Virus record (IMG/VR): IMGVR_UViG_3300044701_003953
Location: 143,521 to 207,520 of that record
Reading direction: 5' to 3' (one strand)
DNA: 64,000 nt
Under the pieces are notes generated by a model that was given only the letters and a program-made list of their open reading frames with translations, had not been told where the DNA came from and did no database searches. Shown here in pieces: positions 9,443-61,988 of this stretch. The translations under genes and the position numbers were made by a program. How positions within the stretch are numbered: position 1 is the stretch's first letter; each line of letters starts with the position of its first letter.

Positions 9443-10375
9443 TTAATTGTTAGGTTTGATTGTACCCAAGACTTGGTGTGCTTTAACAGTAGTAAGTTCG
9501 CCGGGTCGTTTAAGTTCTATCCAACTTACAGCCGGTTCGAAGTCTTGGTGATTGATGATCTCAAAACCCAACATCTCGCACATAGGTATCAGCAGACTTT
9601 TTGGCATATATGTCATGTAGTATCTTTCGGCATATTCGGCCGCGGCCGGTAAGTCTCCGTTGTTGTAACTGAACAAGACCTTACCACCCGGCTTTAGCAA
9701 GTTGTATATCTGTTGTAGATAATGCTTGATGGTGTCGAGACTAAGATAGTTAAAATGGTTCCAACTAAATACGAACCCAAACTGTTCCTGTGGTAACATA
9801 GAAAAATTTTGATCCTTAATTAGATATGGGCGTATGCGACGCTGATAATCCGTGTTAAACGCTTTGACGGTAGAGTCAAGGAATTCTTGGTGAACATCTG
9901 TGACATACAAAGGGTCTCCAGCCACCAGATGTTTAGTGAACTCTCCGTCTCTGCATCCAATCTCTAGAGTGGCATATCTCCAATCAAGGTTAGCATCGAT
10001 TCTGCTCATCAATATGGGCTCAGCATGTTGCGGTATATAAAGAATACGAGCTTGCCTTACACCTTCTGCTTCGTTGTAAACAAATTCAGTTTCGTAGTTA
10101 GCGGCAAAAAACTTTTTAGTGAGTTCTTCGATATCCTGCAAGAGATTATTTGTCAGCAGGGTTTTTCTTGATTCAATGATATCAAGTTCAGCAAGTTTGA
10201 TATCAATAAGCTGTATGGTGTTATTGACTATGCTAGAATAATTTTCAGTGAGTTCATATCGATCGATGATCAATTCTAGTTTCTTTCGCAGATCTGCCAT
10301 GGCAGCAACGACTTTGCTAACATCAAAAGCTAGATCGGCGTCGTTTTTTAGTGAGACTAGTTTATTGAGTTTCAT
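9443..10375 (-). CDS. Class I SAM-dependent methyltransferase with N-terminal coiled coil
   Basis: LEIGCRDG, LLKPGG. Confidence 0.75.
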   Translation of the reverse strand: MKLNKLVSLKNDADLAFDVSKVVAAMADLRKKLELIIDRYELTENYSSIVNNTIQLIDIKLAELDIIESRKTLLTNNLLQDIEELTKKFFAANYETEFVYNEAEGVRQARILYIPQHAEPILMSRIDANLDWRYATLEIGCRDGEFTKHLVAGDPLYVTDVHQEFLDSTVKAFNTDYQRRIRPYLIKDQNFSMLPQEQFGFVFSWNHFNYLSLDTIKHYLQQIYNLLKPGGKVLFSYNNGDLPAAAEYAERYYMTYMPKSLLIPMCEMLGFEIINHQDFEPAVSWIELKRPGELTTVKAHQVLGTIKPNN

Positions 10376-34920: not shown

Positions 34921-36207
34921 TCAGATAGTGGAGATGACCTGTAGAGCAGTCCATATGACTTTGTCCCCCAGGATAAACGCGAATAGCATGGGAATAGGAT
35001 CGATGTTCTTTTTATCTAGTGCATAACCGATCGCGCTAAAAAACAAGAACAAGCAAACATATTTCAATGCTCCCAACTCTGAATAGTAGAAATCTATCAA
35101 CCCCAGGCCTGCTATCAACAACAACAGTATGAATCTAAATCTCGACTGTAGAAACAACAGGGCACGAGCATAGACGTCCAACAAACTGGTACTCAGGAAG
35201 TAGTAGATCACAGCCAGCAACACACAGGCCAGTTGTATGGTCAACAACATACGACCCACTTCTTCGAGATTGGCCAGGTCCGGCCAGTCAATGAGTTTGG
35301 TCTGCAGGATCTGTAACACTATGACTTCACCCACAGTGATGGGTATGCCCACGATCAACAACGGTAACATGCTAGTGATCATGGCCGAGTTGTTGGCCGA
35401 TTCTGCCGAAGTGACTTTTTTACTCAAATCTTTTTCGGTGTGGAACGCCAAGTTGCTGCTCAAAGTCGCCGACGGTCCTGGTATGAGCCCGATCATGCTG
35501 CCAATGACGCCGCCTTTGACAGCACTGGTCCATGGCATATCACCAATCACAGATTCAGCATTACGAGATTGCCATATTTCACTGTCATATTTTTTAAACA
35601 GCTCGGGCACGATCAACAAGCCCAAGGCCATGGAAAAAAACGTGGTGTTCTGGAAAGTCTCTTGTAAGTGATACCAGGCTTCTGGCAAAGCATAATTGTT
35701 TTTTGGGCCCAGTAGAATACCAAACATCACTAACACCAATGCCACCGGTCTGTTTTTACTGAGTAATACAAAAAACAACAATGCGAATCCGAAGATCACG
35801 GCCTTGACCCAGATTTTGTTGAACCAAAACATGAAATCGTACGACCCCAGCACAAACACAGCCACACATGCCACTGATGCAGCCACAGATGCTACCACTG
35901 ATCCACGTGCGGTGTATTTGATCAGTTTGATACGATCTTTGATGCCCAAGGGTTTGATCGAATTCAAGTAGATCAAACTCGACGTTTCGCCAGGTACACC
36001 AGTGGTTATGGCAGCCACGCTGCCAAAATACTGCGACCCAATGATCACGGCTGCCCAGTATAGGAATATGTCAAACACCGACATGAATTCCACAAACGGG
36101 AACATCAACATCATGCCCAAAGCAATAGGCATGGCCGGGAAAAGTCCTACCAACATCCCGGCCATGATTCCTGAAACAAAAGTTATGATTGTTGAAAGTT
36201 CGATCAA
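34921..36207 (-). CDS. TctA-family tripartite tricarboxylate transporter membrane subunit
   Basis: GMLVGLFP, YFGSVAAITTGVPGETSS, IGLIPG, SAESANNSA, PLLIVGIP; many TM segments. Confidence 0.85.
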   Translation of the reverse strand: MIELSTIITFVSGIMAGMLVGLFPAMPIALGMMLMFPFVEFMSVFDIFLYWAAVIIGSQYFGSVAAITTGVPGETSSLIYLNSIKPLGIKDRIKLIKYTARGSVVASVAASVACVAVFVLGSYDFMFWFNKIWVKAVIFGFALLFFVLLSKNRPVALVLVMFGILLGPKNNYALPEAWYHLQETFQNTTFFSMALGLLIVPELFKKYDSEIWQSRNAESVIGDMPWTSAVKGGVIGSMIGLIPGPSATLSSNLAFHTEKDLSKKVTSAESANNSAMITSMLPLLIVGIPITVGEVIVLQILQTKLIDWPDLANLEEVGRMLLTIQLACVLLAVIYYFLSTSLLDVYARALLFLQSRFRFILLLLIAGLGLIDFYYSELGALKYVCLFLFFSAIGYALDKKNIDPIPMLFAFILGDKVIWTALQVISTI

Positions 36208-37912: not shown

Positions 37913-39016
37913 ATGGAGACTTCCCCAATGACACAATTAACTGGAAAAAATGGACGTAGAAAAGTCCGTTGGATCATAGCTCACTTCCCACTAGAACTGT
38001 TTGTTCGTGCGGCCAAGGCATTTCAGCTCGAAATTGAAAAACTTTGCCCCGGGCAGTTCGACATCGAGATCCATACTATCGGTTCTTATCTAAGAGCTTA
38101 CGGTAACGAACTCACTGAAGAACAGAAAAAGAATCTTGGATTCGTGGCCCCACGTATTCCTGGACTCGAAGATCCCAAGAACACAGTTGCAACTAAAAAC
38201 CCAGACAGCCTAGTTTTTGCTAAAGACTTCAACCAACTCAAAGTTTGGTGGAAGACATTGTTTGAGGTGATGAAAGAGCAGAAGTTTGAGATGAGCCAGA
38301 CACAGGTCAACATCGTTGGTAGCCATCTGCACACCAACTTCCATGCCATCGATCTTCCTTACCTTTTCAAAGATCACGATCACGTAGCTAAAGTACTCGA
38401 CGGCGAAGTCGGACAAAAGATCAGCGACCAAGTAGCAAAAGACACTGGTGTAAAAGCACTGGGTTACACATACTCGGGCGGATATCGAATCATCGGTAGT
38501 ACCGAGGGTATTACAAAACTTGATGATCTTAAAGAAAAGAAATTCATCAGCTTTACTGCACCTAGCAATATGTTGTTCAGACTCGCAGACGTACCACGTC
38601 TTCCACGTTACCTCACAACAGCAGAAGACCTCGGTGATATCGCTGAGCAAGGTGGTGCCATTGAGACCACATATCTGCGCTTTGCTGGTAAGAATGTTCT
38701 TAAAACAAACCACAGCATGTTCATGACATCGATCCTGACCAGCGAAAACTTCATAAATTCGTTAACAGAAGACCAGCGTGCCGCTTTTACAGAAGCTGCA
38801 CATCGTGTTGCCAAAATCGAAAGACTTTGGTCTGTTGAAGATGCCGCCAAGTATGAGCAGGATGCTGAAAGCCGTGGCGTTACTATCGTTCCAGTTAACG
38901 AAGAAGACGACACAAGACTCAGAACAGCAGCCAAGGAAATTTACAAGAAAGAAAATCTTGAGAAGATTGGTATCGACTACACATTAGTAGAAGAAATCAT
39001 CAAACTCGGTAAGTAA
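37913..39016 (+). CDS. TRAP transporter DctP-like solute-binding protein without signal peptide (start probably ATG 37928)
   Basis: DLPYLFKDHDHV..VLDGEVG, GYTYSGGYRII, TNHS; CATAAATA at 37887-37894. Confidence 0.75.
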   Translation: METSPMTQLTGKNGRRKVRWIIAHFPLELFVRAAKAFQLEIEKLCPGQFDIEIHTIGSYLRAYGNELTEEQKKNLGFVAPRIPGLEDPKNTVATKNPDSLVFAKDFNQLKVWWKTLFEVMKEQKFEMSQTQVNIVGSHLHTNFHAIDLPYLFKDHDHVAKVLDGEVGQKISDQVAKDTGVKALGYTYSGGYRIIGSTEGITKLDDLKEKKFISFTAPSNMLFRLADVPRLPRYLTTAEDLGDIAEQGGAIETTYLRFAGKNVLKTNHSMFMTSILTSENFINSLTEDQRAAFTEAAHRVAKIERLWSVEDAAKYEQDAESRGVTIVPVNEEDDTRLRTAAKEIYKKENLEKIGIDYTLVEEIIKLGK

Positions 39017-40784: not shown

Positions 40785-40813
40785 ATTGTAGCAAAATGGA
40801 AATTTCTGGTCAA
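40785..40813 (-). promoter_or_regulatory. Early sigma70-like promoter
   Basis: TTGACC-17nt-TACAAT; flanks closely match the 45479..45507 promoter. Confidence 0.8.
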
Positions 40814-40818
40814 CCGGG

Positions 40819-41988
40819 CTATTTTTTGGTGAAAATATAGATTCCTTCGTGCTTGAAACCATTGGATTTTTTATTATTACCTTGCCCTGGGCGCACATTC
40901 AACATCATCTTGATTTCACGTTGATACTGAAATCCACACTTTTCGCTTAATTCACGCCAGCGATCTACTATTTCAAACTTTTCTTTACCAGTACGATAAT
41001 CTGCTATGTTTACAGCATATACACCATCATCATCAAGAGCACGATGGATCATATTAAGAGTGGGTTCTACATAGAGTTCAAACCAAGCGTCAAGATTGCT
41101 ACAACGATTCATACACTGGGTAGGTTCGTCGCTATAGGTTTCAAGATTAAAATAAGGTGGGCTACTGAAAGCGGCCTGATAAAATCCTGGTTCGGGATCA
41201 AAATCTTCGCTAGGCATGCAATTCATATCATATCCGTTGCCCTGCCCGCATTCGGTTAGAAGTTCTCCTAACGCTACCAGACCTTCATAGGTTTTGGTAT
41301 TTGGGTCGATACCTGTGTAATGGTATCTCATGCGGCTAGTCATGGCTCCCATCATACGACCGCCATATCCTGAACTGAAGTCTAATAGATTTCCAAACAA
41401 TGTAGGACAGATATATTCCCACACCGCCCGAGCATTCATAGGTTTGAAATTCTGTATACTACCGCCTGATACCAAATCAAAGGCTCGACGCAGATTTTTC
41501 GGCACTACCGCCAAATCTCCTTCATCTCTATGTTTGTAACAGAGATTGATAGCACGACGTAGTTTATTGTCATTCATGAATCTACCACGCAGACTGACCT
41601 CTGTATTGTCTCTGGTATATGCATCTTGAATGTTTTCGAACCAGAACCTGCCCAAGGTTAGTCCTTCATTGTTACCAACCTGCAGGATGCCATTGTCTAT
41701 CCTTTTTTGTTGTCGGGCTAGATCAAATATGGCCTCCTGGCAACCTTCGAGATTGAAGTAATATATGGGAAGGATGTTCTTGTTGCGATAGATATCAAAA
41801 ACTTCTTGTTCGATATCCTCCTTGCCAGCATCGTCTGCAGCCAGCCATGCTTCTTTGCTCAACTGATGCAATCTCGGCATTTCAACTTCGTAGCCGGTAC
41901 ATATCTTATCCGTGGGAGTATAACCCCATCGTTGGCACAGTTGGTTGTAATAATCTAGTATTTTTTGATTAGTTGTAATACTTGTCAT
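40819..41988 (-). CDS. Amino (N4C/N6A) DNA methyltransferase
   Basis: Motif I LDFSSGYGG precedes motif IV FSSPPYF. Start moved to MTSITT. Confidence 0.85.
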   Translation of the reverse strand: MTSITTNQKILDYYNQLCQRWGYTPTDKICTGYEVEMPRLHQLSKEAWLAADDAGKEDIEQEVFDIYRNKNILPIYYFNLEGCQEAIFDLARQQKRIDNGILQVGNNEGLTLGRFWFENIQDAYTRDNTEVSLRGRFMNDNKLRRAINLCYKHRDEGDLAVVPKNLRRAFDLVSGGSIQNFKPMNARAVWEYICPTLFGNLLDFSSGYGGRMMGAMTSRMRYHYTGIDPNTKTYEGLVALGELLTECGQGNGYDMNCMPSEDFDPEPGFYQAAFSSPPYFNLETYSDEPTQCMNRCSNLDAWFELYVEPTLNMIHRALDDDGVYAVNIADYRTGKEKFEIVDRWRELSEKCGFQYQREIKMMLNVRPGQGNNKKSNGFKHEGIYIFTKK

Positions 41989-43171
41989 ATATCTCTTTGA
42001 CTTTGGCAAGATACTTAATGTTAGGTATCTTGCTCCAAAAATCTTTGGTATGGGTTTTGACCAACACAGTTTTGAACAGTATATTGTAGCACAGTTCGTT
42101 GTTGATTGCATCCGTCAGTTTGTCGAATTCTCTTTTACTCATAGCGACCCAGGGTACTTGAGCACTACAAGCTAGTTCTCCTTTGGCATCATAATAAAAG
42201 TTTGGAATACGACCGGGATTTCCATTTTTTGGTACCATGAGTTTAGGAACACCATACCCCATCCTATCAGTGACATCACGTTTACTGATCATCATGATTT
42301 TGACTTTGTGCTGTTTGTTATAAGTAGTTTTTAGTTTTTTACCACTAATAACATCATCTAACCATTCACGAAATACTAATGGAACAGATCCCGCTGCGGG
42401 ATTGAATTTTGAGTTATCTTCAGGGCCTGATTCAGAACGATAACCTTCAAACCCTGTCTGTAAAACTTCTTGAACAAACTCGAATCCAGCAGCATCTTCA
42501 GTGGGCACTGTTTTTGGATTATCGATTACCAGAGAATTTTTTCCGCAGATGAATTTTACTTTTTTATTCTTTTTAATGGCAGGTACATGGATCAGGCACA
42601 TAGGAGTCATTTTGACTCGACGAAGAAACTGATAGGTGTTGATTTCAGTTAATTTGCTTTCGACATATCGATGCGAATTTGATTTTGTGATTACGATAAC
42701 ATGTTCACTTAAATTTTTATAGTGTTCAATAAATTCATTTGTTGTGTCAAAATCGATGGATCCAAATGTATAAGTGGTTTTCTTTTCATTTTGGAAACAA
42801 TCTTGTACCTCGATATTAGGCTCAAAAGACATATCGCCCACCGCATGCTTGATATTGGCTCGGGCGATCCTGGCCTGGATAGGTTCTTTATCGCCCAAGA
42901 AAATCTGATTCTTGAAAATATGCCATAACCTATCCTGTTCATCGGGGATGGCATCCTGGAGATCGATCATCAATTGTTCGGCTAAGATCAGGGCATCAAG
43001 ACCCGTGCCGCATTGACTGTCCTGGTATGTAGTAGCAAGATTCCGTCGATCCTTCACTGGAATCATCGCCACTAGTTTACGAGCATCACCTTCGTTGGTG
43101 ATGCTCTGTGCACCGGACCTGTTGAAGTACGGAATCTTTTCGATCTGCCGAGAAATCTTGTTAGATAGCAT
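41969..43171 (-). CDS. Eco57I-like N6-methyltransferase homolog with degenerate catalytic motif
   Basis: DSQCGTG (motif I-like) and RLWHIFKNQIF; the expected NPPY position reads FGSIDF. Confidence 0.55.
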   Translation of the reverse strand: MLSNKISRQIEKIPYFNRSGAQSITNEGDARKLVAMIPVKDRRNLATTYQDSQCGTGLDALILAEQLMIDLQDAIPDEQDRLWHIFKNQIFLGDKEPIQARIARANIKHAVGDMSFEPNIEVQDCFQNEKKTTYTFGSIDFDTTNEFIEHYKNLSEHVIVITKSNSHRYVESKLTEINTYQFLRRVKMTPMCLIHVPAIKKNKKVKFICGKNSLVIDNPKTVPTEDAAGFEFVQEVLQTGFEGYRSESGPEDNSKFNPAAGSVPLVFREWLDDVISGKKLKTTYNKQHKVKIMMISKRDVTDRMGYGVPKLMVPKNGNPGRIPNFYYDAKGELACSAQVPWVAMSKREFDKLTDAINNELCYNILFKTVLVKTHTKDFWSKIPNIKYLAKVKEIYDKYYN

Positions 43172-45449
43172 TGAATTGTCCTAACGCAAGATCCATACCG
43201 ATCACATCAATAGCAGGCAAAATCGTCTTCCATTCTCTGGGCATCAATCCTGTGATCGCTACTACCAGTCCGGGATCCTTGAAGTTCACGACATCATACA
43301 TGGATCCTATTTTTAATCCATCGCCTTGCGCTATCTGAGATAGCTCATAGACTTGTTTCAATGCGTAGCGTATCCTGAGTTCGGTGAGATCTTGTTCTTC
43401 TTGTGTTGTGGTGCCACCGGGTTTGTTCTTTTTGCCTTTCTTTTGATTGGAGCCCCGTACGAGATCATTTTCATTGAGCTGTGTGGTAGCTGACACAGAA
43501 TTTGAGTCTTTGTTCTTATCGGCCATCAATTGTTTGATCTCGTCGGTGATGCAGGCGGATTTCACGAAACTACCGATTCGTTCTATGTAATTTCCTATGT
43601 TACTGAGGAATCTCTGCTTGAGATCAACACCGTCGACAATGTTCCAACCATTGTCAGTGTAGTCATAGATGTCACTGCATTCGCCAAACTCAGCGGCCAC
43701 TTGCTCGGGATCACGACCGGTTGCGTCGGCCTTTCGTTGTATATGCTGATACATCACGCTCACGAAGCGTTCGGGGTTGTAGTCAAACACGATGACTTCT
43801 TGTTTGTCGCCGTCGGACCATGGAGTCTTGCAACGGAACGAACCTTGGAAATAGTCTTCGGCGCTCTTGGCATCATTGATCTGATGTACAGCCCACCATT
43901 GCTTAATGCTGGTGCCTTCCAGGAAACGTCCACAGGTAAGTGTGATGGTCCCGATGAAGTCGCTCTTACCTGATTCTACAGCATCGATACGGGTCTGTAC
44001 GTCACCGATATCACTTACACTTGCTATATTGTCTTTGTTGCCTTTATCTGTGGCCAGAATGATGTCATACTTCTTGAAGTAAGGGTGTTCCTGTAGCATC
44101 CGAGCCACTGCTTTGATAGCCTTTACATTTTTAGGCAGGACCCATAGCGTGTGCTTGGTGACTTTTTCCACAATGTTTTCAAACTTTGGTGGCAGATTTT
44201 TATAACCACGTAGCCGGACATGATTGATGAGTTCGTTTACCGCGTCTCGATATACCAGCTGATCGCCTTGGGTAGAAAAGATACCACGGGCGCCGAGATT
44301 GAAGTTCTCGTCATTGACCAGAGATCGGATCTTTGCAGGTACAGAGATCAAGGCCCAATTGATACGAGACTTGTAACGGAACTGTCGAGTCTGTTCGTCA
44401 TCAAGGTCATTGACAGCCAGTAACTCATCACGGATTTTCTGCTCGTCGATGTAATCAAAACTGTAGATGGATTCTTCTGGGAAACGATTGCTCAGCAGGG
44501 TTTTGTAAGGTGTGCCGCTGAGTTCGATCCAGAATTTGGATGTGAGATTGTCCCAAAACTTTTTGGTCTTTTCGGTGTTGGTGGCAAAGTGTTGCTCATC
44601 AAAGATCACTAGATCCCAGTCCGTAGACACGATCTGTTTCAGCAGATCGCTGGTGTTGGTTTCTAGATGCTTGGCGGCAAACTGCAGACTGATGGCCACA
44701 AGATCACATTCACCTGTACCAAACTCAATCTTGGATTTTTTGAGATCATCGTAGTTGTGGAAGATGTAGTCACAGTAGTCCACATGCTCTTCCTCTCCGC
44801 CGCGGGCCAGCACAGTCCAACTGGGGATAGCACCGGGTTTACCCGTGACGATCAATACCTTTTTGAACCCCAATGCCTTGACGATGGCATGGGAGATCAG
44901 GCATTTGCCTGCCCGCATGATGGCGTTGATCAGTATGGCTCGATCGCCAGCTTTGAAACGTTCGCCGGCCCAATCAATGATCTTGCGCTGATAGTCAAAT
45001 AAGAGATAATTGGTGATGGCGGATTTACCGGTGAGGATTTTGTTGATCAAACGATCCATAATTTCCATTGCTTCTTCACTGGTCTTGCAATCAGTGAAGT
45101 AAATCCACTCACGATCTTTGTCATCTCGATTTTTCGGATAACCGAGTTTTTTCAATTGAGCATGAAGGTACTTGTCGCGGTATTGCACAGGAATATGCCA
45201 TTGTTTGAGAACAACCGGAGTTTCTGCTACACCGGTGGTGTCTGTCTGCGCGATGCGAACCTCGGCACGATATTCCTTAGTTTCGCCGACCTTGGCAAGT
45301 ACTGGAAAAATCTTACCGTCTTTAGTACGACGTGTTTCGTCCTTGTACCGCTCAGTACTCCACATATAGATGGTGTGCATCTTGCCTGCGTTAGGTTGCT
45401 TAGAAAATTGACGTTTGGCAGATAGTGCCCGATCGGTGAGTTTTGCCAT
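43161..45449 (-). CDS. SF2 helicase (Res-like) with N-terminal GIY-YIG/T5orf172-like nuclease domain
   Basis: KVGET..RI..REW; Walker A-like NAIMRAGKC; DEQH; LSGTP; EGTS; Q..FR. Confidence 0.75.
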   Translation of the reverse strand: MAKLTDRALSAKRQFSKQPNAGKMHTIYMWSTERYKDETRRTKDGKIFPVLAKVGETKEYRAEVRIAQTDTTGVAETPVVLKQWHIPVQYRDKYLHAQLKKLGYPKNRDDKDREWIYFTDCKTSEEAMEIMDRLINKILTGKSAITNYLLFDYQRKIIDWAGERFKAGDRAILINAIMRAGKCLISHAIVKALGFKKVLIVTGKPGAIPSWTVLARGGEEEHVDYCDYIFHNYDDLKKSKIEFGTGECDLVAISLQFAAKHLETNTSDLLKQIVSTDWDLVIFDEQHFATNTEKTKKFWDNLTSKFWIELSGTPYKTLLSNRFPEESIYSFDYIDEQKIRDELLAVNDLDDEQTRQFRYKSRINWALISVPAKIRSLVNDENFNLGARGIFSTQGDQLVYRDAVNELINHVRLRGYKNLPPKFENIVEKVTKHTLWVLPKNVKAIKAVARMLQEHPYFKKYDIILATDKGNKDNIASVSDIGDVQTRIDAVESGKSDFIGTITLTCGRFLEGTSIKQWWAVHQINDAKSAEDYFQGSFRCKTPWSDGDKQEVIVFDYNPERFVSVMYQHIQRKADATGRDPEQVAAEFGECSDIYDYTDNGWNIVDGVDLKQRFLSNIGNYIERIGSFVKSACITDEIKQLMADKNKDSNSVSATTQLNENDLVRGSNQKKGKKNKPGGTTTQEEQDLTELRIRYALKQVYELSQIAQGDGLKIGSMYDVVNFKDPGLVVAITGLMPREWKTILPAIDVIGMDLALGQFNAI

Positions 45450-45478
45450 TGTTGTTTGTTTTGATTACTATATCTTAT

Positions 45479-45507
45479 ATTATAACCGAAATGCGATTAC
45501 TGGTCAA
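45479..45507 (-). promoter_or_regulatory. Early sigma70-like promoter
   Basis: TTGACC-17nt-TATAAT. Confidence 0.8.
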
Positions 45508-45529: not shown

Positions 45530-46084
45530 CTAACCTATCACTAAGTGCCGGAAATAGTCAAAATGCTGTTCTAGGGTCCAGGCATCGGGATCAATGGCTC
45601 GTCCATCGTAGGTCTCGAACTGGGCTTCGAACACTTGTGTATACCTCCGGAATGGAAACCAAACATCCGGGGTGTGGCTGGCCCACCCCGCTTCTTTGAG
45701 TGCGTGATGTTTGGTACGGCTCAGCGTCACAGTAGGACAATTGAGTGCTTCGTCTATGGTGATTACTCCGGCGATCATCATATCTCTGATACGAGCCGCC
45801 GGGATCAAGTGCTCAAAGTCTGCGTCCTGATCCACGCCCACTTCTCGATAGTGTGCGCCGATGTTTTCCTTGATGGCGTAGCCGTGATAACGTCTCAGCA
45901 AGTTGTCCATGTCGTCGCGTACTAATCTCAGGGTTTGTTGGTCGTTGGTGGAGTTGCGATAGATCTCCAGTATCTCGGACAACCTACCCGAACAGTAGCG
46001 GTAGGTAGCACGATAACTCTCGGAGTTCCTGGGTGTGCGCCCATATACTGGCGCCACGAAGTTCTCGACTAGATTGCGATCCAT
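45530..46084 (-). CDS. Hypothetical protein, possibly HNH-like
   Basis: DFEHLIP..P..H pattern. Confidence 0.5.
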   Translation of the reverse strand: MDRNLVENFVAPVYGRTPRNSESYRATYRYCSGRLSEILEIYRNSTNDQQTLRLVRDDMDNLLRRYHGYAIKENIGAHYREVGVDQDADFEHLIPAARIRDMMIAGVITIDEALNCPTVTLSRTKHHALKEAGWASHTPDVWFPFRRYTQVFEAQFETYDGRAIDPDAWTLEQHFDYFRHLVIG

Positions 46085-46497
46085 TATTTTACTTCCTCGA
46101 AATGTTTATAAAACATGGGATTGACTATCCGATATCTTTGCGTATTGTCTTTAAAAATCTTGGTTTTTTTGTTGTGACAATTGGCACACAATACTACTAG
46201 ATTATCCTGATTGTCGTTGTGTTTATTACCATCCCAATGGTCAATAGTAAGACTGTCTGTATTTGGATCACCGCATACCCAACCAAGTCTACCATCTTGA
46301 TTTTCACAACCGCCACGACTCTTCATGAACATGTCACGACTGATTTTTTTAACCGTGCGGTGTGGATCACAAAAAGTTTTCCATTTAACGCCGATCGTGC
46401 CATCTGCTTTGATCCATTTCTTGTGATAACCAACATGATCGTTACAATCAGGCATAGCGCACTTCGGCGCCCAATTTTTTATGATATTGTGTTTCAT
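46084..46497 (-). CDS. HNH endonuclease-like protein
   Basis: LTIDHWDGNKHNDNQDNLVVLCANCH. Confidence 0.85.
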   Translation of the reverse strand: MKHNIIKNWAPKCAMPDCNDHVGYHKKWIKADGTIGVKWKTFCDPHRTVKKISRDMFMKSRGGCENQDGRLGWVCGDPNTDSLTIDHWDGNKHNDNQDNLVVLCANCHNKKTKIFKDNTQRYRIVNPMFYKHFEEVK

Positions 46498-50912: not shown

Positions 50913-51425
50913 TTACTTCAAGAATTCTTTTATATCAAGATCGTAATACATGCTATCAATGAGGTGCACCTCCATGAGATACAACACATAACTGGCTACA
51001 CTGGAGCCTCTTCCTACACCACAAACTACTCCATTTGATTTCATGGTATCTGCGAAATATTTAAGATATTTTAAAAGAGGCATGAGATTTCTTTCCTGGT
51101 ACAACAGCAGTTCTTCGCCACACCTTTGTAGTTGTTCTTGTGTGCGGCACTGGGATAGTATCCATGCCGCGATGTCCAAGTCTTGATATTCTTTGGGCAT
51201 GTACCAGTTGCTCTGACATATCTCGTCGAATTCTTCTGGGCTAACCGACAAAGGCTGATACTTTTGCAGATCTGAAAATTCTCTCCAGTATTTTTCATTG
51301 CTGGAATTAAACTTCTCCGGATCGTCAATCAGCAAGTTAGACATGTCTATGTCGGGGATCTGATATATCAGATCAACGACGTCTTTTTCGTCGAATACCT
51401 TGCGTCCGTATTGATCTTTGATCAT
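50913..51425 (-). CDS. Stand-alone fragment of DNA polymerase III alpha (DnaE)
   Basis: R..EEL, GVGRGSSVASYVLYL.EVH.ID; stops just before the catalytic PDID region. Confidence 0.75.
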   Translation of the reverse strand: MIKDQYGRKVFDEKDVVDLIYQIPDIDMSNLLIDDPEKFNSSNEKYWREFSDLQKYQPLSVSPEEFDEICQSNWYMPKEYQDLDIAAWILSQCRTQEQLQRCGEELLLYQERNLMPLLKYLKYFADTMKSNGVVCGVGRGSSVASYVLYLMEVHLIDSMYYDLDIKEFLK

Positions 51426-52659: not shown

Positions 52660-55600
52660 TTATTCAAATACTCCAATTTGTGGGAATTTCAAGTATTTAT
52701 CATCTGTTTCGGGCCCTTGATAGTTATCCCGATTATCAAAGAATCGTGTACCATTTCTGTCAAATACGGTGTATCCGCCACTGGTCTCCACGTCTGTTTT
52801 CCAGCGTCGGTAAGTGGGTACAGTCTGGCTTCCGCTGATATTGGTGTCGTAGACCATGAATGTAAAACCATTGGTGACTCCGTTTAATACCTTGATTTTT
52901 TCACCGAACACTACTTCGCGAACAAATTCCAGCGTGACTAAATCTTCGTCGCTGATGTTTATCCTCCAGATTCCCCCTCGCTGGTTATCTATCTCGTAAC
53001 TGATTACTGTGCCCGGGGACACCGCTGATAAGTCATTGTTAGTGATTAATATGTTGTCCCTGACATCAACTACATAGGTATTTGCAGGAATCTTTGGCCC
53101 AAATAATCTCATACCATTAGAAATTCCCAATGGTATCCGGTCAACGGCTACGCCATATGTTATTGTTTCGGCATCGAGGTCATAATTTTCATCAAAAGAT
53201 ACCGATGTCACCGTAGATCTTAGTAAAATCGTTATGCCCGGGCTGACGCTTTTTACAAGTGGTTTGTTCAGAGTCACTGAGACTTCGTTGTTTTCATAGT
53301 TTATCGACTGTGCGATTATTTGTGTCCCGTCGGCGATTCCTAGCGCCGATACAGACTTACCGAGATAAGATACTCCTAATAACCAAGGTAGCACGAGTTC
53401 TGTGTCGCCAGCATTGGCACCGGCTCTTAGCATTTGACTTTCGACCGTCAGAGCTTTATTTTTTATTCCGGGTATCACACTATAAGCATCAAATCCAAAT
53501 TTAGTATCGGTCCCTTCAGAGTCTTGCCCAACGGCTTCGATGTCGCTGCCGTCATTGGGTATATCTCCAATATAAAAGTTTTGATAATCAACCCAGCCAT
53601 CAAAAGGTCCAGTGGGGTTATCATATTCTTCTTGCCTCGCGAATACCAAAAGTTCTCCATGCTCGAAACTCTTGATGCCATCGATTCCGCCGTTATCTTT
53701 TATATATTGCACGGTTCGTTTGTTGATAGAATCGAATGATTGCTCGACAGCATACTCAACGATTCCTCCGCCATGTACTCCCGGGCCCAGTGTAAGTCTG
53801 TCAAACGTGGTCTCTTTGCTGTTCTTGAATTCTCCGATGCTAGGCACAAAATACTTACTAAGAGCACTATCGAGTTGATATCTATCAATGGTGAATTCGA
53901 CTTCGTCAAACCTAATGCCTTTGTTCTTGAGTCGATAAGCGATGAGTTTAGCCGCACCGGGTACAGTATAGGCCAATACCACTGCACGACGGAATCCTAA
54001 CACAGTTCTATCGGGTTGCACCGACGTCATCCAGTCTGGGAATACGCCACGAGCTTGATAACCGAGAGCGTTGATCAGATTATTGTTCATGTTAGCGAAA
54101 GTACTGGGGTAAATCGTCTGATTTTCGAATTGATAAGTTAAATTGGTTTTAGATGTAAAGGTTGGCACAGGACGGCTCACTGTTACCAAACTTTCAGAGA
54201 CTGATAATATTTTAGTCCCTGGCAATATGCCCGGTCCTGTTAAAGTTGCACCAACGATGTCTTCGGAGGGGGATCTATAAAGATTGATCTGTGACCCCGA
54301 CGACGACTGGGCCACGAGTATACCGTTATGTCCGATGTAAGGTTTCCCTCTCAACTCAACTTGTTCGCTAACGGGGGCTTCGGATAGATTGTTGGGGTCA
54401 ATGATTTCTATGTATACTACTTCATATTTGGTATTATAGAATTCATCGACAGCCACAGCAGTTTTGATCTCGCCGAAGTTAATTTGTTTCCAGTAATGAT
54501 TTTTCTCGATAGCAGCGATATAATCGTTTAGATCGCTGGCATTGATTCCGGCCGCCGACAAGAATTTAATAGTAGTCGCCTTGCCAAACCATGGATCCGA
54601 TCTTCTATAGATCAATTCGTCGGGGAATATATCTTGATCATTGATAATCTCAAAAAACTTTTGTCTTTGTTCCAGCGTCGGAAATGCTTTGAAGTAGAGA
54701 TTTTCAAAAGGTTTCTTGTGTACTGGGTCGAGTCGAAGCTTAAATCTCTTGACCGACGAAACCACACCGTCAAGTATATAAACCAAATCTCCTTCCCTGA
54801 TTTCGCCTAACAACAATTGATTTAAAATTAGTTCAGTATAAACTGCTCCGTTGTCGTCGATTTTCTTAAACTGACCTACAATAATAGTGTTTGGAGAAAT
54901 GTTTTTTCCACTAATTTCTTTCAGTCGGAAATCGCTAGATCCCGAATAGGCCAAAAAGATTTTATTAGGATAGGATACTTCTGTCCAGCTAACTGTAGAC
55001 GTGTAGCCATCGAGGCTGATTGTTTCGGATACTTTCTTGGGCGACACGTTCAGGCCCGAAGATTTATAGATTTTCTTAATATTAGCTGTTTCGGCTTTGA
55101 CATCAAATTGATAAAGATTATCAAATCTAGTGCGATTTTTGTCAAAGGTGGTGTTATCTTTATCTAATTGGAAATATCGGAAAGTAGCCCGGCCCGATAT
55201 GATACCATCGTTGATGAGTTGCAAACTCAATGCCTGTGGTAGACGACTCTCGGGGCCCGAAACAAGGCTGTATTTTACTGTCTGCCCTAGTTCACTGACA
55301 GCTTCGATCTTGAGTTCGCTGATTGATCCATTGACGACCGAACCGAGATTTTCGGGAGTTTTCCATATTATACGATCAGTGAGACTTCCTAACACAGTCA
55401 GGCTATACTGTATAGGTTCACTACGATATAAACCTTCGGCAGTGGAAGATCTCAAGATAACGATATCGCCAACTCCGATATCAGAAATCAGTGCTTGGTC
55501 AAGGACGACCCGGGTGATCATTGCTGGATCATCGATCGTGCCGGTATTGACGATCTCTTCTCTGAGGATCTTAGTGCCTTCTGGTATACCGCCTACAATG

Positions 55601-57432
55601 ATAGATCGTCCAACCGTTGATGTACCCGGTACATAAGAAAGATCGAGTATAAAACTCTCTGCTTGAGCAGGAGATAACACTTTTCTCTGCGAAATTAATT
55701 TCTTTTCCGCTGTAATGATAAATTCATATGTTTTGATTTCTTCTTGCTGTGGTTCAAGGTACCCGTGCAACCAACCGTTTTCATCTAACGACAACGCCGG
55801 AGGCAATTTACTTTCTCCTTCGTCGAATACGGTACCGTCACGATCAAAACCTATTCCTGTTTCGTTTGCTGGATCTATCTCGGGGTAGGTCAAAGTCAAC
55901 CCAACAAAATATTTCCCTTGGGGCAACGGATCTGTAAATTTGAGTTGCTGTCCGCGATCCAGCACAACATAGTCAACATCGACGTCGAGCTCAACGATAT
56001 CGGGATCTTGGTCATCGTCCTCTTCGCTGTCGGGTTTAAATAATCCAAAAATATTAAATTCTGCGACTTCGGGAAAATTAGAATAAATGTTAACCGATGT
56101 GTTTCCGAGGTTCTTTAATGTGTAATTGGAACTGACATCAGGAGGATAATTTAGCAAGGAAACGTGATCTTGATTGACTTGATAAATTATTTCTCGATGG
56201 CTGATTATTTCACCTTCCTTGTAGTTCTTTGCTGGAGTCCATTCGGGTATACCAGCCAACAAAAGATTGTCGGTGCTACCATCAGAATAAAATTCTACGT
56301 ATGTGTCTTGGGAAAACCCAATTGATCTTACTGCGTTTTTATCGAAACCGGATCCGCCACTAGTAGAGATCGACCAAGTCAAATCGTCTCCATTGAAATC
56401 AATGGCATCAAATTTAAAAGCAAAATTGTTTTCTTGCCGAAGAGTTGGTAAATTTCCGGCTGGCGTAATGATCACTGGTAAGTAACGATTATCGTGGTCG
56501 ACAGTGAGAGAATTGTTATCGGCGGTGATAGCGATTTTTTGTATCTGATACAAACGATAGATCGACGATGTATCGGGCGTGATATCTTCACGCGATAGCA
56601 CATCTTCGTTAGCGACATAAAGCAGATCTTGATATCTTAATATCGTACCACGTGTGTATGGCGTGTTAGGTCTCCACTTGTAGATCACTCCGTTAATAAA
56701 GTGATCTTGGTCGGCTGTAAATAGACCTTTTGATGCTACGCTGATGACGTAATTCAAGGAGTCGACGTTAGCACCGTCTGAAACTTCGACAGTAAAAGTA
56801 TAGGCTCGGTTTCTAGATTTCCCCAATGAATCGTATGGTACATCATCGAAGAAAGTCCTCACCGACGCATTGTTAGGATTATAGGTATCGTAGCCCGGTG
56901 TTATCGAGGCATATTCGTCGGTTTCTCTTAGTATGTAACCTGAGATGAGCCCCGAGCTCGACATGATTACTCCGGGTGGCAACTGTCCTTTTGTGATTTT
57001 CCATTTTAAGTCGGCATTAGGATTCTCTTCTACCGCACGTAATTGCTTTTGGAAATAAGTCCCGTCGAATACATTGCCAAGGTTGTTTATCCTGGGAGTA
57101 ATCACCGGAGGAAAAACATTATTGACTGAAAGGAAAAATGTTCGATCGACTACGGTGCCTTGTTGTGTGGTTGCACGGATAGTGAAACGATATTCTCTTG
57201 TTTCGTCGACTTCGATGGGATCAAGTACTACTGGTACACCCTGTAGCATTCCGGAGCGCACTATTTGTATACCGGGAGGTAGTTCTCCAGATTGGAATGT
57301 AAATCTCACAGATTCATCGGCTGTTGACGATCCGTCGGTACTTACTTCTAATCGTTTTTCATAGAAAAACAACTCGGGTATTGATCCCAAGTTTCCCGCG
57401 GCGGTGATCCAACGGGGTCTAGACATTACCAA
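52660..57432 (-). CDS. Large baseplate wedge-like protein with Ig-like repeats
   Basis: Repeated GxLPPG..SG.ISG Ig/cadherin-like modules; 1590 aa; structural gene context. Confidence 0.65.
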   Translation of the reverse strand: MVMSRPRWITAAGNLGSIPELFFYEKRLEVSTDGSSTADESVRFTFQSGELPPGIQIVRSGMLQGVPVVLDPIEVDETREYRFTIRATTQQGTVVDRTFFLSVNNVFPPVITPRINNLGNVFDGTYFQKQLRAVEENPNADLKWKITKGQLPPGVIMSSSGLISGYILRETDEYASITPGYDTYNPNNASVRTFFDDVPYDSLGKSRNRAYTFTVEVSDGANVDSLNYVISVASKGLFTADQDHFINGVIYKWRPNTPYTRGTILRYQDLLYVANEDVLSREDITPDTSSIYRLYQIQKIAITADNNSLTVDHDNRYLPVIITPAGNLPTLRQENNFAFKFDAIDFNGDDLTWSISTSGGSGFDKNAVRSIGFSQDTYVEFYSDGSTDNLLLAGIPEWTPAKNYKEGEIISHREIIYQVNQDHVSLLNYPPDVSSNYTLKNLGNTSVNIYSNFPEVAEFNIFGLFKPDSEEDDDQDPDIVELDVDVDYVVLDRGQQLKFTDPLPQGKYFVGLTLTYPEIDPANETGIGFDRDGTVFDEGESKLPPALSLDENGWLHGYLEPQQEEIKTYEFIITAEKKLISQRKVLSPAQAESFILDLSYVPGTSTVGRSIIVGGIPEGTKILREEIVNTGTIDDPAMITRVVLDQALISDIGVGDIVILRSSTAEGLYRSEPIQYSLTVLGSLTDRIIWKTPENLGSVVNGSISELKIEAVSELGQTVKYSLVSGPESRLPQALSLQLINDGIISGRATFRYFQLDKDNTTFDKNRTRFDNLYQFDVKAETANIKKIYKSSGLNVSPKKVSETISLDGYTSTVSWTEVSYPNKIFLAYSGSSDFRLKEISGKNISPNTIIVGQFKKIDDNGAVYTELILNQLLLGEIREGDLVYILDGVVSSVKRFKLRLDPVHKKPFENLYFKAFPTLEQRQKFFEIINDQDIFPDELIYRRSDPWFGKATTIKFLSAAGINASDLNDYIAAIEKNHYWKQINFGEIKTAVAVDEFYNTKYEVVYIEIIDPNNLSEAPVSEQVELRGKPYIGHNGILVAQSSSGSQINLYRSPSEDIVGATLTGPGILPGTKILSVSESLVTVSRPVPTFTSKTNLTYQFENQTIYPSTFANMNNNLINALGYQARGVFPDWMTSVQPDRTVLGFRRAVVLAYTVPGAAKLIAYRLKNKGIRFDEVEFTIDRYQLDSALSKYFVPSIGEFKNSKETTFDRLTLGPGVHGGGIVEYAVEQSFDSINKRTVQYIKDNGGIDGIKSFEHGELLVFARQEEYDNPTGPFDGWVDYQNFYIGDIPNDGSDIEAVGQDSEGTDTKFGFDAYSVIPGIKNKALTVESQMLRAGANAGDTELVLPWLLGVSYLGKSVSALGIADGTQIIAQSINYENNEVSVTLNKPLVKSVSPGITILLRSTVTSVSFDENYDLDAETITYGVAVDRIPLGISNGMRLFGPKIPANTYVVDVRDNILITNNDLSAVSPGTVISYEIDNQRGGIWRINISDEDLVTLEFVREVVFGEKIKVLNGVTNGFTFMVYDTNISGSQTVPTYRRWKTDVETSGGYTVFDRNGTRFFDNRDNYQGPETDDKYLKFPQIGVFE

Positions 57433-61436: not shown

Positions 61437-61988
61437 TCAAGTACGTTGATTGATCACGGACCAATCCATGATCTTCCAGAGTGAATCGATATATTTTTTC
61501 TTGTCGCTGTGATAATCCATCTGGAAAGCGTGTTCCCACATGTCGATGATGATGACTATGCCGTCGCTGGGAATACGATGATTCTTGATTTGTTTGAGCT
61601 TGCCTTGACGATTCACATACACCCAGCCCGACCCTTGTACTTTCATGCACTCTTCAGTGATGGCTTTTTTGAAAGTGACAAAATCACCATACTCCCTGTT
61701 GATCATGTCTAGGATTCGCCCAGTGGGGCGATTACTGGCTGAACGTGTTTTGAACTGGCTAAAATAAAGATCGTGTAAGCGGGCCCCGGCTTCGTTGAAA
61801 GTGCAATCACCTTCCTTGGCATTGTAGCGGGTGACATAGCCCTTGTAGAGTTTTCCATAATGCAGTTGCATCAAGGCCGAACTCAATACAGGAGTGAAAC
61901 TGTTCATGCCCCCAGGCAGTTTGACCATTTCCAGGGTTTGGGAGTTCTTTGATTCTAGTAGATCAATGATTTCACGTATTTCATTCAT
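61437..61988 (-). CDS. Fe/Mn superoxide dismutase
   Basis: HYGK..Y, FNEAG..LH, GSGW, DMWEHAF; all four metal ligands appear present. Confidence 0.85.
   Translation of the reverse strand: MNEIREIIDLLESKNSQTLEMVKLPGGMNSFTPVLSSALMQLHYGKLYKGYVTRYNAKEGDCTFNEAGARLHDLYFSQFKTRSASNRPTGRILDMINREYGDFVTFKKAITEECMKVQGSGWVYVNRQGKLKQIKNHRIPSDGIVIIIDMWEHAFQMDYHSDKKKYIDSLWKIMDWSVINQRT

What the first reader, a model, noticed from the sequence alone, without database searches (positions are those of the whole stretch)
40819..45507. RM-like operon: helicase-nuclease + pseudo-methyltransferase + unrelated intact methyltransferase
Three overlapping genes follow an early promoter. The first is a Res-like SF2 helicase with a GIY-YIG/T5orf172-like N-terminus and atypical motifs (GKC, DEQH). 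The second is an Eco57I-like methyltransferase that keeps a motif I remnant but has SIDF in place of NPPY. The third is a separate SPPY methyltransferase. Inference: the dead methyltransferase serves as a recognition subunit, with self-protection supplied by the third gene or by the deazaguanine mark. This would be a phage weapon against host or competitor DNA, or an RM decoy.
Basis: partly seen in the sequence, partly recalled or inferred. Interest (0 to 1): 0.7.

Follow-up and report, generated by a model that had tools for sequence, protein, structure and literature searches.

The report
Phage restriction-like module with dead methyltransferase
A freshwater jumbo phage carries a conserved three-gene operon (nuclease-helicase, a methyltransferase-shaped protein without its catalytic motif, and a separate intact methyltransferase) that most likely lets the phage cut DNA lacking its own methyl mark.

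Summary
Three overlapping minus-strand genes follow a near-consensus sigma-70 promoter. g1 (43161-45449) is a T5orf172/GIY-YIG domain fused to an SF2 helicase. g2 (41969-43171) folds as a gamma-class N6-adenine methyltransferase plus target-recognition domain. It keeps SAM motifs I-III but has SIDF where relatives have NPPY. g3 (40819-41988, not 42111) is an SPPY amino-methyltransferase.

The module is not decaying: dN/dS is 0.05-0.26 for all three genes. The trio recurs with the same order and overlaps in all 23 relatives' loci examined.

Relatives in other jumbo phages fuse g1 and g2 into one chain with NPPY intact. That gives the domain order of Type ISP enzymes and the domain set of the YeeA/YeeB/YeeC cluster. 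No relative that keeps N..P[FY] has g3 beside it. Every relative that lost the motif does. Synteny shows g3 is a backbone gene, with g1-g2 sitting beside it as an accessory cassette.

Best reading: a split restriction-like weapon in which the dead methyltransferase reads DNA and g3 supplies the self mark. Cleavage, specificity and target are inferred, not shown.

The deazaguanine idea finds no support in the held record. Verdict: a new variant of a known kind.

The parts
45479..45507 (-). Sigma-70-type promoter TTGACC-17-TATAAT in front of g1
   Evidence: 11 of 12 matches. Sequence read. The pattern is enriched, 6 found against 0.74 expected.
43161..45449 (-). g1, 762 aa: T5orf172/GIY-YIG domain, SF2 helicase-like ATPase and a C-terminal region
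45090..45380 (-). g1 residues ~24-120: T5orf172 (GIY-YIG superfamily) domain. Y28, K53, R65 and E114 are invariant across the family.
   Evidence: Invariant columns. PF10544 on homologues. Atlas features.
43770..45011 (-). g1 residues ~147-560: SF2 motor with AGKC (Walker A), DEQH, SGTP, GTITLTCGRFLEGT and DYFQGSFR motifs
   Evidence: Pfam ResIII. PADLOC Type IIG model positions 155-302. Invariant motifs.
41969..43171 (-). g2, 400 aa: gamma-class N6-adenine methyltransferase fold plus target-recognition domain, with the catalytic tetrad lost
43001..43021 (-). g2 motif I (D51-S-Q-C-G-T-G57), the retained SAM-binding loop
   Evidence: D51 in 39 of 40 members, C54 and G55 in 40 of 40, G57 in 39 of 40.
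42749..42760 (-). g2 S138-I-D-F141, in the place of NPPY
   Evidence: Aligned against NPPY/NPPF relatives. The tetrad never holds N or P in 40 family members.
40819..41988 (-). g3, 389 aa: helical N-terminal region plus a class I amino-methyltransferase core with motif I and SPPY
41152..41163 (-). g3 SPPY catalytic motif (residues 276-279 of the 389-aa protein)
   Evidence: Invariant in 32 aligned homologues.
40785..40813 (-). Next promoter, TTGACC-17-TACAAT with an upstream TG. It marks the downstream end of the operon.

Best explanation
The three genes form one operon that encodes a phage-borne, split, restriction-like module.

g1 is the effector: a T5orf172 (GIY-YIG superfamily) nuclease domain fused to an SF2 DNA translocase.

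g2 is a former gamma-class adenine methyltransferase with its target-recognition domain. It still binds SAM (motifs I-III are kept) but can no longer transfer a methyl group to an exocyclic amine, because NPPY has become SIDF. It acts as the DNA-reading subunit that loads or licenses g1.

g3 is an intact SPPY amino-methyltransferase and a backbone gene of this phage group. It puts the self mark on phage DNA.

Unmarked DNA, from the host chromosome or a co-infecting phage, would be recognised by g2. g1 would then translocate along it and cut it, as Type ISP and Type I enzymes do.

Shown here: gene structure, domain identities, motif loss with retention of the SAM motifs, purifying selection, g1+g2 fusions in relatives, strict g2-dead/g3 linkage, and the accessory status of g1-g2.

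Inferred: g1-g2 binding, nuclease activity, SAM binding, DNA as the g3 substrate, protection by the g3 mark, and the identity of the target.
For: Anatomy:
- The genes overlap by 11 and 20 nt and sit behind an 11-of-12 sigma-70 promoter.

g1:
- ResIII. The helicase part matches the PADLOC Type IIG restriction-methyltransferase model, E 3.8e-11.
- T5orf172 evidence. GIY-YIG-type residues and the helicase motifs are invariant.

g2:
- The confident model matches CamA, MmeI, M.BseCI, BrxX/PglX and M.TaqI over both domains.
- SIDF aligns with NPPY. Motifs I, II and III are conserved in 34-40 of 40 members, and the tetrad never has N or P.

Rosetta stone:
- P0171 (1133 aa, on jumbo-phage contigs) matches the g1 profile at E 1e-101 and the g2 profile at 7e-22 in one chain, with NPPY intact. 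Five more fusions behave likewise.

Linkage:
- The trio occurs in 22 of 22 IMG/VR loci plus L004.
- No g3 lies near relatives whose methyltransferase part keeps NPPY, NAPF or NVPF.

Selection:
- dN/dS is 0.05-0.26. The least saturated pair gives 0.065, 0.074 and 0.056 for g1, g2 and g3.

Synteny:
- L009 has the 354-aa and 184-aa neighbours and g3, but no g1-g2.

Literature:
- MmeI-like methyltransferases flanked by a helicase and a GIY-YIG protein were proposed to be restriction systems (PMC2731913).
- Vibrio homologues affect phage sensitivity (as reported in PMC9973331).
- Type ISP enzymes have the order nuclease, SF2 motor, methyltransferase, recognition domain (PMC4666363).
Against: - No biochemical or genetic data exist for any member of this phage family.
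- The B. subtilis DnmA-YeeB-YeeC cluster showed no restriction or antiphage activity under the conditions tested (PMC9973331).
- T5orf172 has also been proposed to act in recombination (PMC7824862), and its nuclease activity is not established here.
- The cassette sits among replication genes: clamp loader, DNA polymerase B and a ParB-like protein.
- The closest structural neighbours of g3 are RNA m2G methyltransferases such as Trm11 and TrmN, so a DNA substrate is not proven.
- g3 is far more conserved than the g2 recognition domain. This is awkward if both must share one specific site.
- The single-origin test for the g3-linked clade is unresolved (support 47/66), so the perfect co-occurrence may reflect only one or two evolutionary events.
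Confidence: 0.5

Rival explanations
1. Motor-coupled DNA modification for anti-restriction, like the DarB methylase-helicase dyad. g1 translocates along phage DNA and carries g2 (DNA clamp or reader) and g3 (catalyst), so the genome is marked quickly and completely. On this view the T5orf172 domain binds DNA rather than cutting it.
For: Methyltransferase plus SF2 helicase dyads are widespread in phages. In P1 DarB they protect DNA in cis against Type I restriction (PMC5512222). g3 is the only recognisable DNA amino-methyltransferase in the held record. The three genes are translationally coupled. Loss of g2 catalysis together with gain of g3 fits a simple swap of the catalyst.
Against: The domain order is nuclease, motor, methyltransferase, as in Type ISP enzymes, not methyltransferase then motor as in DarB (PMC4666363, PMC5512222). 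GIY-YIG-type residues Y28, K53, R65 and E114 are invariant. g3 works alone in many phages, including Bacteroides phage DAC16, so it needs no motor. Bacterial relatives sit next to integrases and defence-like genes.
Confidence: 0.2
2. A replication or recombination helper. g1 is a fork- or junction-processing helicase-nuclease and g2 is a structure- or sequence-specific DNA-binding adaptor. g3 is an independent orphan methyltransferase that merely lies next door.
For: T5orf172 proteins of jumbo phages were proposed to act as Holliday-junction-resolvase-like enzymes (PMC7824862). The neighbours include a clamp loader, an HNH endonuclease, a ParB-like protein and DNA polymerase. The fused relative P0171 lies beside DNA polymerase III alpha, ThyX and an endonuclease I-like gene.
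Against: It does not explain why g3 overlaps g2 in all 24 loci that lost motif IV yet is absent beside every relative that kept it. It does not explain why the SAM motifs are retained. The closest characterised architectures are restriction enzymes.
Confidence: 0.12
3. g2 is still an enzyme. Its conserved [SA]-[IV]-[DQE]-F tetrad and following TTN motif would support a different SAM-dependent reaction, for example on another atom or on a modified base. The operon would then be a two-step DNA modification pathway.
For: Motifs I-III are conserved as strongly as in active enzymes. The replacement tetrad is itself conserved: I139 in 37 of 40, F141 in 39 of 40, and T143-T144-N145 in 38-39 of 40. 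dN/dS is low.
Against: To my knowledge, no characterised amino-methyltransferase works without the N/D/S-x-P-aromatic loop. A catalytically dead but SAM-binding reader would show the same conservation. No other base-modification genes lie in the operon.
Confidence: 0.1
4. A decaying relic of a restriction-modification system, with g1 and g2 on the way to becoming pseudogenes.
For: The catalytic motif of g2 is lost. The B. subtilis analogue was interpreted as a relic (PMC9973331).
Against: Reading frames are intact in 24 loci down to 37% g1 identity. dN/dS is 0.05-0.26. Helicase, nuclease-domain and SAM motifs are invariant.
Confidence: 0.02

Closest known systems
[quoted passage not shown]
   Same: The order of functions is the same: nuclease, SF2 helicase-like motor, gamma-class adenine methyltransferase, then target-recognition domain (PMC4666363). 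The g1 motor matches the PADLOC Type IIG restriction-methyltransferase model. Fused phage relatives such as P0171 put everything in one chain with NPPY intact.
   Different: The nuclease here is T5orf172/GIY-YIG, not the Mrr PD-(D/E)xK type. The protein is split into two genes. The methyltransferase part has lost its catalytic tetrad. Modification is handed to a non-homologous third gene. The element is phage-borne rather than a plasmid or chromosomal defence system.
YeeA(DnmA)-YeeB-YeeC cluster: an MmeI-like methyltransferase without a nuclease domain, an SF2 helicase and a T5orf172/GIY-YIG protein
   Same: The same three domain types occur in a conserved cluster. Morgan et al. proposed that the methyltransferase subunit gives specificity while the helicase and GIY-YIG proteins cut (PMC2731913, PMC9973331). 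MmeI is among the fold matches of g2.
   Different: There the methyltransferase is active (m6A at GACGAG) and about twice as large. The T5orf172 protein and the helicase are separate proteins in a different gene order. No second methyltransferase is present. The cluster is cellular.
Type I restriction-modification (HsdR/HsdM/HsdS)
   Same: A nuclease-motor subunit, a separate DNA-reading subunit and a methyltransferase subunit are encoded in one operon. Type I M subunits appear among the fold matches of g2 and g3.
   Different: The reading subunit here has a methyltransferase-plus-recognition-domain fold, not an HsdS fold. There is no evidence that g3 binds g2. The nuclease family differs.
Phage P1 DarB-type methylase-helicase dyad
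   Same: It is phage-encoded and combines an adenine-methyltransferase fold with an SF2 motor (PMC5512222).
   Different: DarB has the methyltransferase N-terminal to the helicase, has no nuclease domain, is active and is packaged in the virion. No homology was detected here.
Pseudo-methyltransferase partners such as METTL14 in the METTL3-METTL14 complex (from my own knowledge)
   Same: A methyltransferase fold with a degenerate catalytic loop is kept under selection as a nucleic-acid-binding partner, while another protein does the chemistry.
   Different: That system is eukaryotic, acts on RNA and pairs two homologous subunits. Here the active enzyme g3 is not homologous to g2, and their interaction is unproven.

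Membership tests
Type ISP restriction-modification enzyme | Single polypeptide carrying all four functions | tested here: not met
   g1 and g2 are separate genes overlapping by 11 nt. Fused relatives do exist.
Type ISP restriction-modification enzyme | N-terminal Mrr-family PD-(D/E)xK nuclease | tested here: not met
   The N-terminus is T5orf172/GIY-YIG. No Mrr hit was found.
Type ISP restriction-modification enzyme | SF2 helicase-like ATPase with intact motifs | tested here: met
   ResIII E 1.7e-8. PADLOC Type IIG model E 3.8e-11. Invariant K182, DEQH and SGTP.
Type ISP restriction-modification enzyme | Active gamma-class N6-adenine methyltransferase (NPPY/F) | tested here: not met
   SIDF stands in place of NPPY.
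Type ISP restriction-modification enzyme | C-terminal target-recognition domain | tested here: met
   The model matches CamA, M.BseCI and M.TaqI across both domains.
Type ISP restriction-modification enzyme | ATP-driven translocation and cleavage on collision | not testable with these tools
   This needs biochemistry.
YeeA/YeeB/YeeC-type cluster | Methyltransferase-plus-recognition-domain protein without its own nuclease, next to an SF2 helicase and a T5orf172/GIY-YIG protein | tested here: met
   All three domain types are in the operon, with T5orf172 fused to the helicase. The cluster is described in PMC2731913 and PMC9973331.
YeeA/YeeB/YeeC-type cluster | The methyltransferase subunit is catalytically active and provides the protective methylation | tested here: not met
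   Motif IV is lost in all 40 family members.
YeeA/YeeB/YeeC-type cluster | Sequence homology to YeeA, YeeB and YeeC themselves | not tested
NCBIfam gave no hit for g1 or g2.
T5orf172 (PF10544, GIY-YIG clan) | Match to the family model | tested here: inconclusive
   P0001 itself gave no Pfam hit. Two of 14 aligned homologues match at E <= 4.2e-4. Many homologues carry a precomputed PF10544 hit. Atlas features score 0.94 with 171 shared features.
T5orf172 (PF10544, GIY-YIG clan) | Conserved Tyr, Arg and Glu of the GIY-YIG core | tested here: met
   Y28, K53, R65 and E114 are invariant; G55, R113 and W115 are nearly invariant. Assigning them to catalytic roles is by inspection.
Eco57I / N6_Mtase gamma-class DNA adenine methyltransferases (g2) | Fold and motif I-III SAM site | tested here: met
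   Foldseek E 3.6e-15 to CamA. Motifs conserved. Profile search reaches NPPY-bearing relatives.
Eco57I / N6_Mtase gamma-class DNA adenine methyltransferases (g2) | Catalytic (N/D)PP(Y/F/W) motif IV | tested here: not met
N6_N4_Mtase (PF01555) DNA amino-methyltransferases (g3) | Score above Pfam's gathering threshold | tested here: not met
   19.9 bits against a cut-off of 26.7. Atlas features nevertheless point to viral PF01555 clusters at 0.98-0.99.
N6_N4_Mtase (PF01555) DNA amino-methyltransferases (g3) | (S/D/N)PP(Y/F) motif and a glycine-rich SAM loop | tested here: met
   S276-P-P-Y279 and D203-F-S-S-G-Y-G-G210 are invariant in 32 homologues.
N6_N4_Mtase (PF01555) DNA amino-methyltransferases (g3) | Methylates DNA (m4C or m6A) | not testable with these tools
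   The structural neighbours are mostly RNA m2G/m6A enzymes and Type I M subunits.

The most novel reading that the evidence does not exclude
The dead methyltransferase g2 is a SAM-loaded reader. It flips the target base into a pocket that can no longer methylate it, and so senses whether the g3 mark is present. It then licenses the g1 nuclease-motor only on unmarked DNA. In the stronger version, g2 is the shared specificity subunit for both g1 and the non-homologous methyltransferase g3. That would be a Type I-like R-S-M system whose S subunit is a fossil methyltransferase. It would have been assembled by docking an accessory nuclease-reader pair onto a core phage methyltransferase, and the phage would use it offensively against host or rival DNA.
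Probability: 0.18. Interest if true: 0.75.

Novelty: new variant of a known kind. Interest (0 to 1): 0.55.

Why it matters
Restriction-like enzymes built from a motor, a nuclease and a methyltransferase are known as bacterial defences. Here the same parts form a conserved family in aquatic jumbo phages.

The family shows a readable evolutionary series:
- one fused chain with an active methyltransferase;
- a split pair with the motif kept;
- a split pair whose methyltransferase is catalytically dead but selected, always coupled to a non-homologous methyltransferase that is a backbone gene of the phage.

If the reading is right, it is a natural example of a methyltransferase turned into a pure DNA reader. 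It would also show a phage using its genome-wide methyl mark as a self label to attack unmarked DNA.

It also gives a tractable handle on the poorly understood YeeA/B/C-type and T5orf172 systems. Finally, it provides a three-gene cassette that can be tested directly in laboratory strains.

Tried and rejected
- Complex prediction on g1 residues 580-762 + g2 + g3, with g3 as the partner, gave no verdict (score 0.00). It is not evidence for or against binding.
- Megablast of the region against 50,697 phage records found nothing.
- phmmer of all three proteins against PDB sequences gave nothing significant.
- NCBIfam gave no hit for g1, g2 or g3.
- PADLOC gave nothing for g2.
- Deazaguanine route: no TGT (PF01702) or QueC (PF06508) in the 207.5-kb record. 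The record is only about 59% complete, so absence from the whole genome is not shown.
- No other DNA methyltransferase family (PF01555, PF07669, PF00145, PF02086) was found in six-frame searches of the record. The first-look filter also missed g3 itself, so this search has limited sensitivity.
- An NPPF string at residues ~219-249 of some g2 homologues was considered as a relocated catalytic motif. I rejected it: it lies in the recognition domain (the NPxxxP stretch), is absent from most members, and is not at the motif IV column.
- A 386-aa ORF downstream in L040 was checked as a possible displaced g3 and is unrelated.
- The single-origin test of the g3-linked clade on the g1 tree was unresolved.
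- No RNA run holding the region was listed, so expression was not examined.
Full report
**Setting.** The window is bases 143521-207520 of a 207.5-kb IMG/VR virus record judged about 59% complete. The same proteins also occur on a 339.8-kb contig. The runs that hold the region are freshwater metagenomes. The window encodes DNA polymerase B, a clamp loader, PhoH, a ClpB-like ATPase and several auxiliary metabolic genes. This is a jumbo phage. Megablast found no near relative among 50,697 deposited phage records.

**Observation.** Nearly all genes of the window, including the three in question, lie on the minus strand.
- g1 is 43161-45449 (762 aa).
- g2 is 41969-43171 (400 aa). Its ATG overlaps the end of g1 by 11 nt.
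- The third frame is open from 42111. However, more than a thousand homologue clusters are 380-391 aa long and begin at the equivalent of residue 42, and the Atlas record does too. g3 is therefore 40819-41988 (389 aa) and overlaps g2 by 20 nt.
- A TTGACC-17-TATAAT promoter (11 of 12 matches) lies at 45507-45479, about 30 nt before the g1 start.
- A sister promoter with the same extended sequence lies at 40813-40785, directly after the g3 stop. The three genes therefore form one transcription unit. The pattern is enriched in the window: 6 found against 0.74 expected.
- That the promoter is 'early' is an inference from its host-type consensus.

**g1.**
- Pfam finds ResIII at residues 150-315.
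- PADLOC's Type IIG restriction-methyltransferase model matches the same stretch at E 3.8e-11.
- Across 14 homologues down to 38% identity, the following motifs are invariant or nearly so: Walker A (MRAGKC), DEQH, SGTPYKT, GTITLTCGRFLEGT and DYFQGSFR. The unusual GKC and DEQH are family traits of an intact motor, not signs of decay.
- The N-terminal ~120 residues give no Pfam hit in P0001 itself. T5orf172 (PF10544) is recorded on many homologues, is found in 2 of 14 aligned members and on the fused relative P0171. The language-model features of residues 1-150 point to T5orf172/MUG113/GIY-YIG clusters at 0.94.
- Y28, K53, R65 and E114 are invariant. By inspection they correspond to the GIY, YIG-equivalent, Arg and Glu positions of the GIY-YIG core.

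**g2.**
- No family library recognises it.
- Its features resemble Eco57I/N6_Mtase clusters at 0.95-0.97.
- An AlphaFold2 model built on 41 sequences is confident (pLDDT 90.4, pTM 0.83).
- Foldseek places it with two-domain gamma-class DNA adenine methyltransferases: CamA (E 3.6e-15), MmeI, M.BseCI, BrxX/PglX and M.TaqI.
- A profile search of 1.84 billion representatives found 257 relatives. Among the relatives whose N-terminal methyltransferase part matches the profile, most of those checked, both ~400-aa phage proteins and 1130-1360-aa fusion proteins, carry NPPY or NPPF.
- In the alignment, S138-I-D-F141 of g2 falls exactly under that tetrad.
- In 40 family members the tetrad is SIDF (25), SIQF, SIEF, TIDF and similar. 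It never contains N or P.
- Motif I is kept: D51 in 39 of 40, C54 and G55 in 40 of 40, G57 in 39 of 40. So are the motif II acid D94 (40 of 40) and motif III D124/F126 (34 and 37 of 40). The aromatic F141 (39 of 40) and a following TTN are also conserved.
- The protein has therefore lost the amine-activating loop but kept what looks like a complete SAM site and the base-stacking aromatic. The most variable stretch (residues 226-300) lies in the recognition domain.

**g3.**
- It has an invariant glycine-rich loop (DFSSGYGG), followed about 70 residues later by an invariant SSPPY.
- The model (pLDDT 86.4) has a helical N-terminal region and a class I methyltransferase core.
- The nearest solved neighbours of that core are the exocyclic-amine enzymes Trm11, TrmN and Trm14 (Z 15.5-17.9). 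PrmC, METTL5, TrmN6 and Type I M subunits also appear.
- Pfam N6_N4_Mtase scores below threshold: 19.9 against 26.7 bits. Atlas features point to viral PF01555 clusters automatically named N4-cytosine DNA methyltransferases, at 0.98-0.99.
- It is therefore an intact amino-methyltransferase. DNA is the likely substrate but this is unproven.

**Is the module alive?**
- The trio is present in the same order and with the same overlaps in all 22 IMG/VR loci recovered with a g1 profile, and in L004. g1 identities go down to 37%.
- Pairwise dN/dS is 0.06-0.13 for g1, 0.07-0.26 for g2 and 0.05-0.16 for g3.
- In the least saturated pair (dS 0.55-0.67) the values are 0.065, 0.074 and 0.056.
Both were tested and neither is met.

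**Relatives tell how the parts belong together.**
- P0171 (1133 aa) matches the g1 profile over residues 24-717 (E 1e-101) and the g2 profile over 748-898 (E 7e-22), and it has NPPY. P0165, P0187, P0194, P0197 and P0209 behave likewise.
- P0171 and P0209 lie on phage contigs. For P0171 these are 204-241 kb and carry ThyX, DNA polymerase III alpha and an endonuclease I-like gene.
- More distant 1330-aa ResIII+Eco57I proteins lie in bacterial contigs next to an integrase and an AAA-protease pair.
- The fusions are classic Rosetta-stone evidence that g1 and g2 work as one machine. Their domain order of nuclease, motor, methyltransferase and recognition domain is that of Type ISP enzymes (PMC4666363, PMC3553950).
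- P0232 fuses a helicase to the recognition-domain part of g2 alone.
- The domain set also equals that of the YeeA(DnmA)/YeeB/YeeC clusters. Morgan et al. proposed that there the MmeI-like methyltransferase gives specificity and the helicase and GIY-YIG proteins cut (PMC2731913).
- The B. subtilis copy showed no restriction activity. Vibrio crassostreae homologues were reported to affect phage sensitivity (PMC9973331).

**The link between motif loss and g3.**
- Split relatives whose partner keeps the loop have no g3 homologue within the fetched flanks of 5-6 kb or less (shorter where the contig ends). These are L012 (NPPY), L040 (NAPF) and L042 (NVPF).
- The same is true of the fused phage forms, the gut-phage pair L008 and the bacterial loci.
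- Every locus whose g2 lost both N and P has g3 overlapping it.
- On a g1 tree the split forms are a clade apart from the fusions (100/100). The g3-linked rows can be explained by a single change, but support is weak (47/66; 50% of bootstrap trees). The association may therefore rest on only one or two events.
- Conversely, g3 is much more widespread than g1-g2. There are 1174 clusters at E <= 0.001, mostly 65-90% identical. g3 occurs alone in many large phages and in cultured Bacteroides phages of the DAC16 group.
- Synteny settles the direction. L009 has homologues of the window's 354-aa ParB-like gene (62.5% identity) and 184-aa gene (55%), followed by an unrelated 194-aa ORF and then g3 (68%), with no g1-g2.
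- g3 is thus a backbone gene, and g1-g2 is an accessory pair sitting directly in front of it. The HNH gene at 46084-46497 is a further insertion.

**Mechanism proposed.**
- The phage marks its DNA with g3.
- g2 is loaded with SAM, which Type I, III and IIG enzymes also use as a cofactor or effector (my own knowledge). It recognises its site and probably probes the target base in a pocket that can no longer methylate it.
- On unmarked DNA it licenses g1, which translocates with ATP and cuts with its GIY-YIG-type domain.
- The likely victims are the host chromosome, for nucleotide supply and host shut-off, or co-infecting unmarked phages.
- Steps shown here: architecture, homology, motif states, selection, fusions, linkage and synteny.
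- Steps inferred: g1-g2 binding, SAM binding, cleavage, DNA methylation by g3, protection by that mark, and the target.
- I put this at about 0.5.

**Rival readings.**
- A DarB-like motor-coupled modification device for anti-restriction (0.2; PMC5512222).
- A replication or recombination helper, with g3 only a neighbour (0.12; PMC7824862).
- A g2 with new chemistry (0.1).
- A decaying relic (0.02, contradicted).

**One difficulty for the favoured model.** g3 is far more conserved than the g2 recognition domain. Either g3 makes a frequent, generic mark that covers any g2 site, or g2 steers g3. The second option is the more novel reading (probability about 0.18).

**What found no support.**
- The deazaguanine mark: no TGT and no QueC in the held record.
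- The decoy idea.
- The complex prediction gave no verdict.

**Verdict.** This is a real, conserved, selected three-gene module. It is a new variant of the Type ISP / YeeABC kind of restriction-like machinery. It is phage-borne, with a fossil methyltransferase as reader and a non-homologous backbone methyltransferase as modifier. Interest 0.55.

Noticed in passing
L012:9410-9844, L036:9402-9800, L038:9606-10112, L042:3574-4026; also L011:3649-4092: In relatives without g3, the helicase-methyltransferase gene or pair is followed by a conserved small ORF (132-168 aa). It resembles only the N-terminal, motif I part of the methyltransferase (DNSCGDG, EPACGHG, EPACGDG). The ORFs are 28-58% identical to each other. 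This could be a half-methyltransferase partner occupying the slot that g3 holds in the window.
   Followed up: partly
Proteins P0144, P0145, P0149, P0154, P0156, P0161, P0177: A sister group of ~350-415-aa phage proteins shares the g2 recognition domain. It shows the opposite degeneration: there is no recognisable motif I, but NPAF, NVPF, NAPF, NPDF or NSDF stand at motif IV. P0162 and P0167 keep NPPF. Degenerate methyltransferase-like readers seem to be a recurrent theme.
   Followed up: partly
window 46084-46497 (-): An HNH endonuclease gene (137 aa) lies between the 354-aa ParB-like gene and the 184-aa gene. It is absent from the syntenic locus L009, so it is probably a mobile homing-type insertion. 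L012 also has an HNH gene just upstream of its helicase.
   Followed up: partly
window 45479-45507 and 40785-40813 (-): The two promoters share an extended sequence, TTGACCAG(T/A)AAT...TA(T/C)AATATAAG, beyond the hexamers. This suggests a phage-specific promoter class.
   Followed up: partly
window 8339-10375 (-), next to DNA polymerase B at 10391-13051: A radical SAM protein (367 aa) and a class I methyltransferase (310 aa) lie directly downstream of the family B DNA polymerase gene. There is no TGT or QueC in the record.
   Followed up: no
window 17309-18592, 34921-36207, 37913-39016 (+), 61437-61988: Auxiliary metabolic genes are present: isocitrate lyase, a TctA-family transporter subunit, a DctP-type solute-binding protein (on the plus strand beside PhoH) and an Fe/Mn superoxide dismutase.
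   Followed up: no
window 50913-51425 (-): A 170-aa ORF matches only positions 20-94 of the DNA polymerase III alpha NTPase domain. It may be a fragment, or a gene split or interrupted by an intron or intein.
   Followed up: no
window 52660-57432 (-): A 1590-aa protein carries a He_PIG Ig-like domain and a CBM_5_12 carbohydrate-binding module. It is probably a fibre or adhesin.
   Followed up: no
L031:3-833, L032, L035: Some trio-bearing phages carry a second, shorter SPPY methyltransferase (276 aa, 27-28% identical to g3) about 5 kb upstream of the helicase.
   Followed up: no
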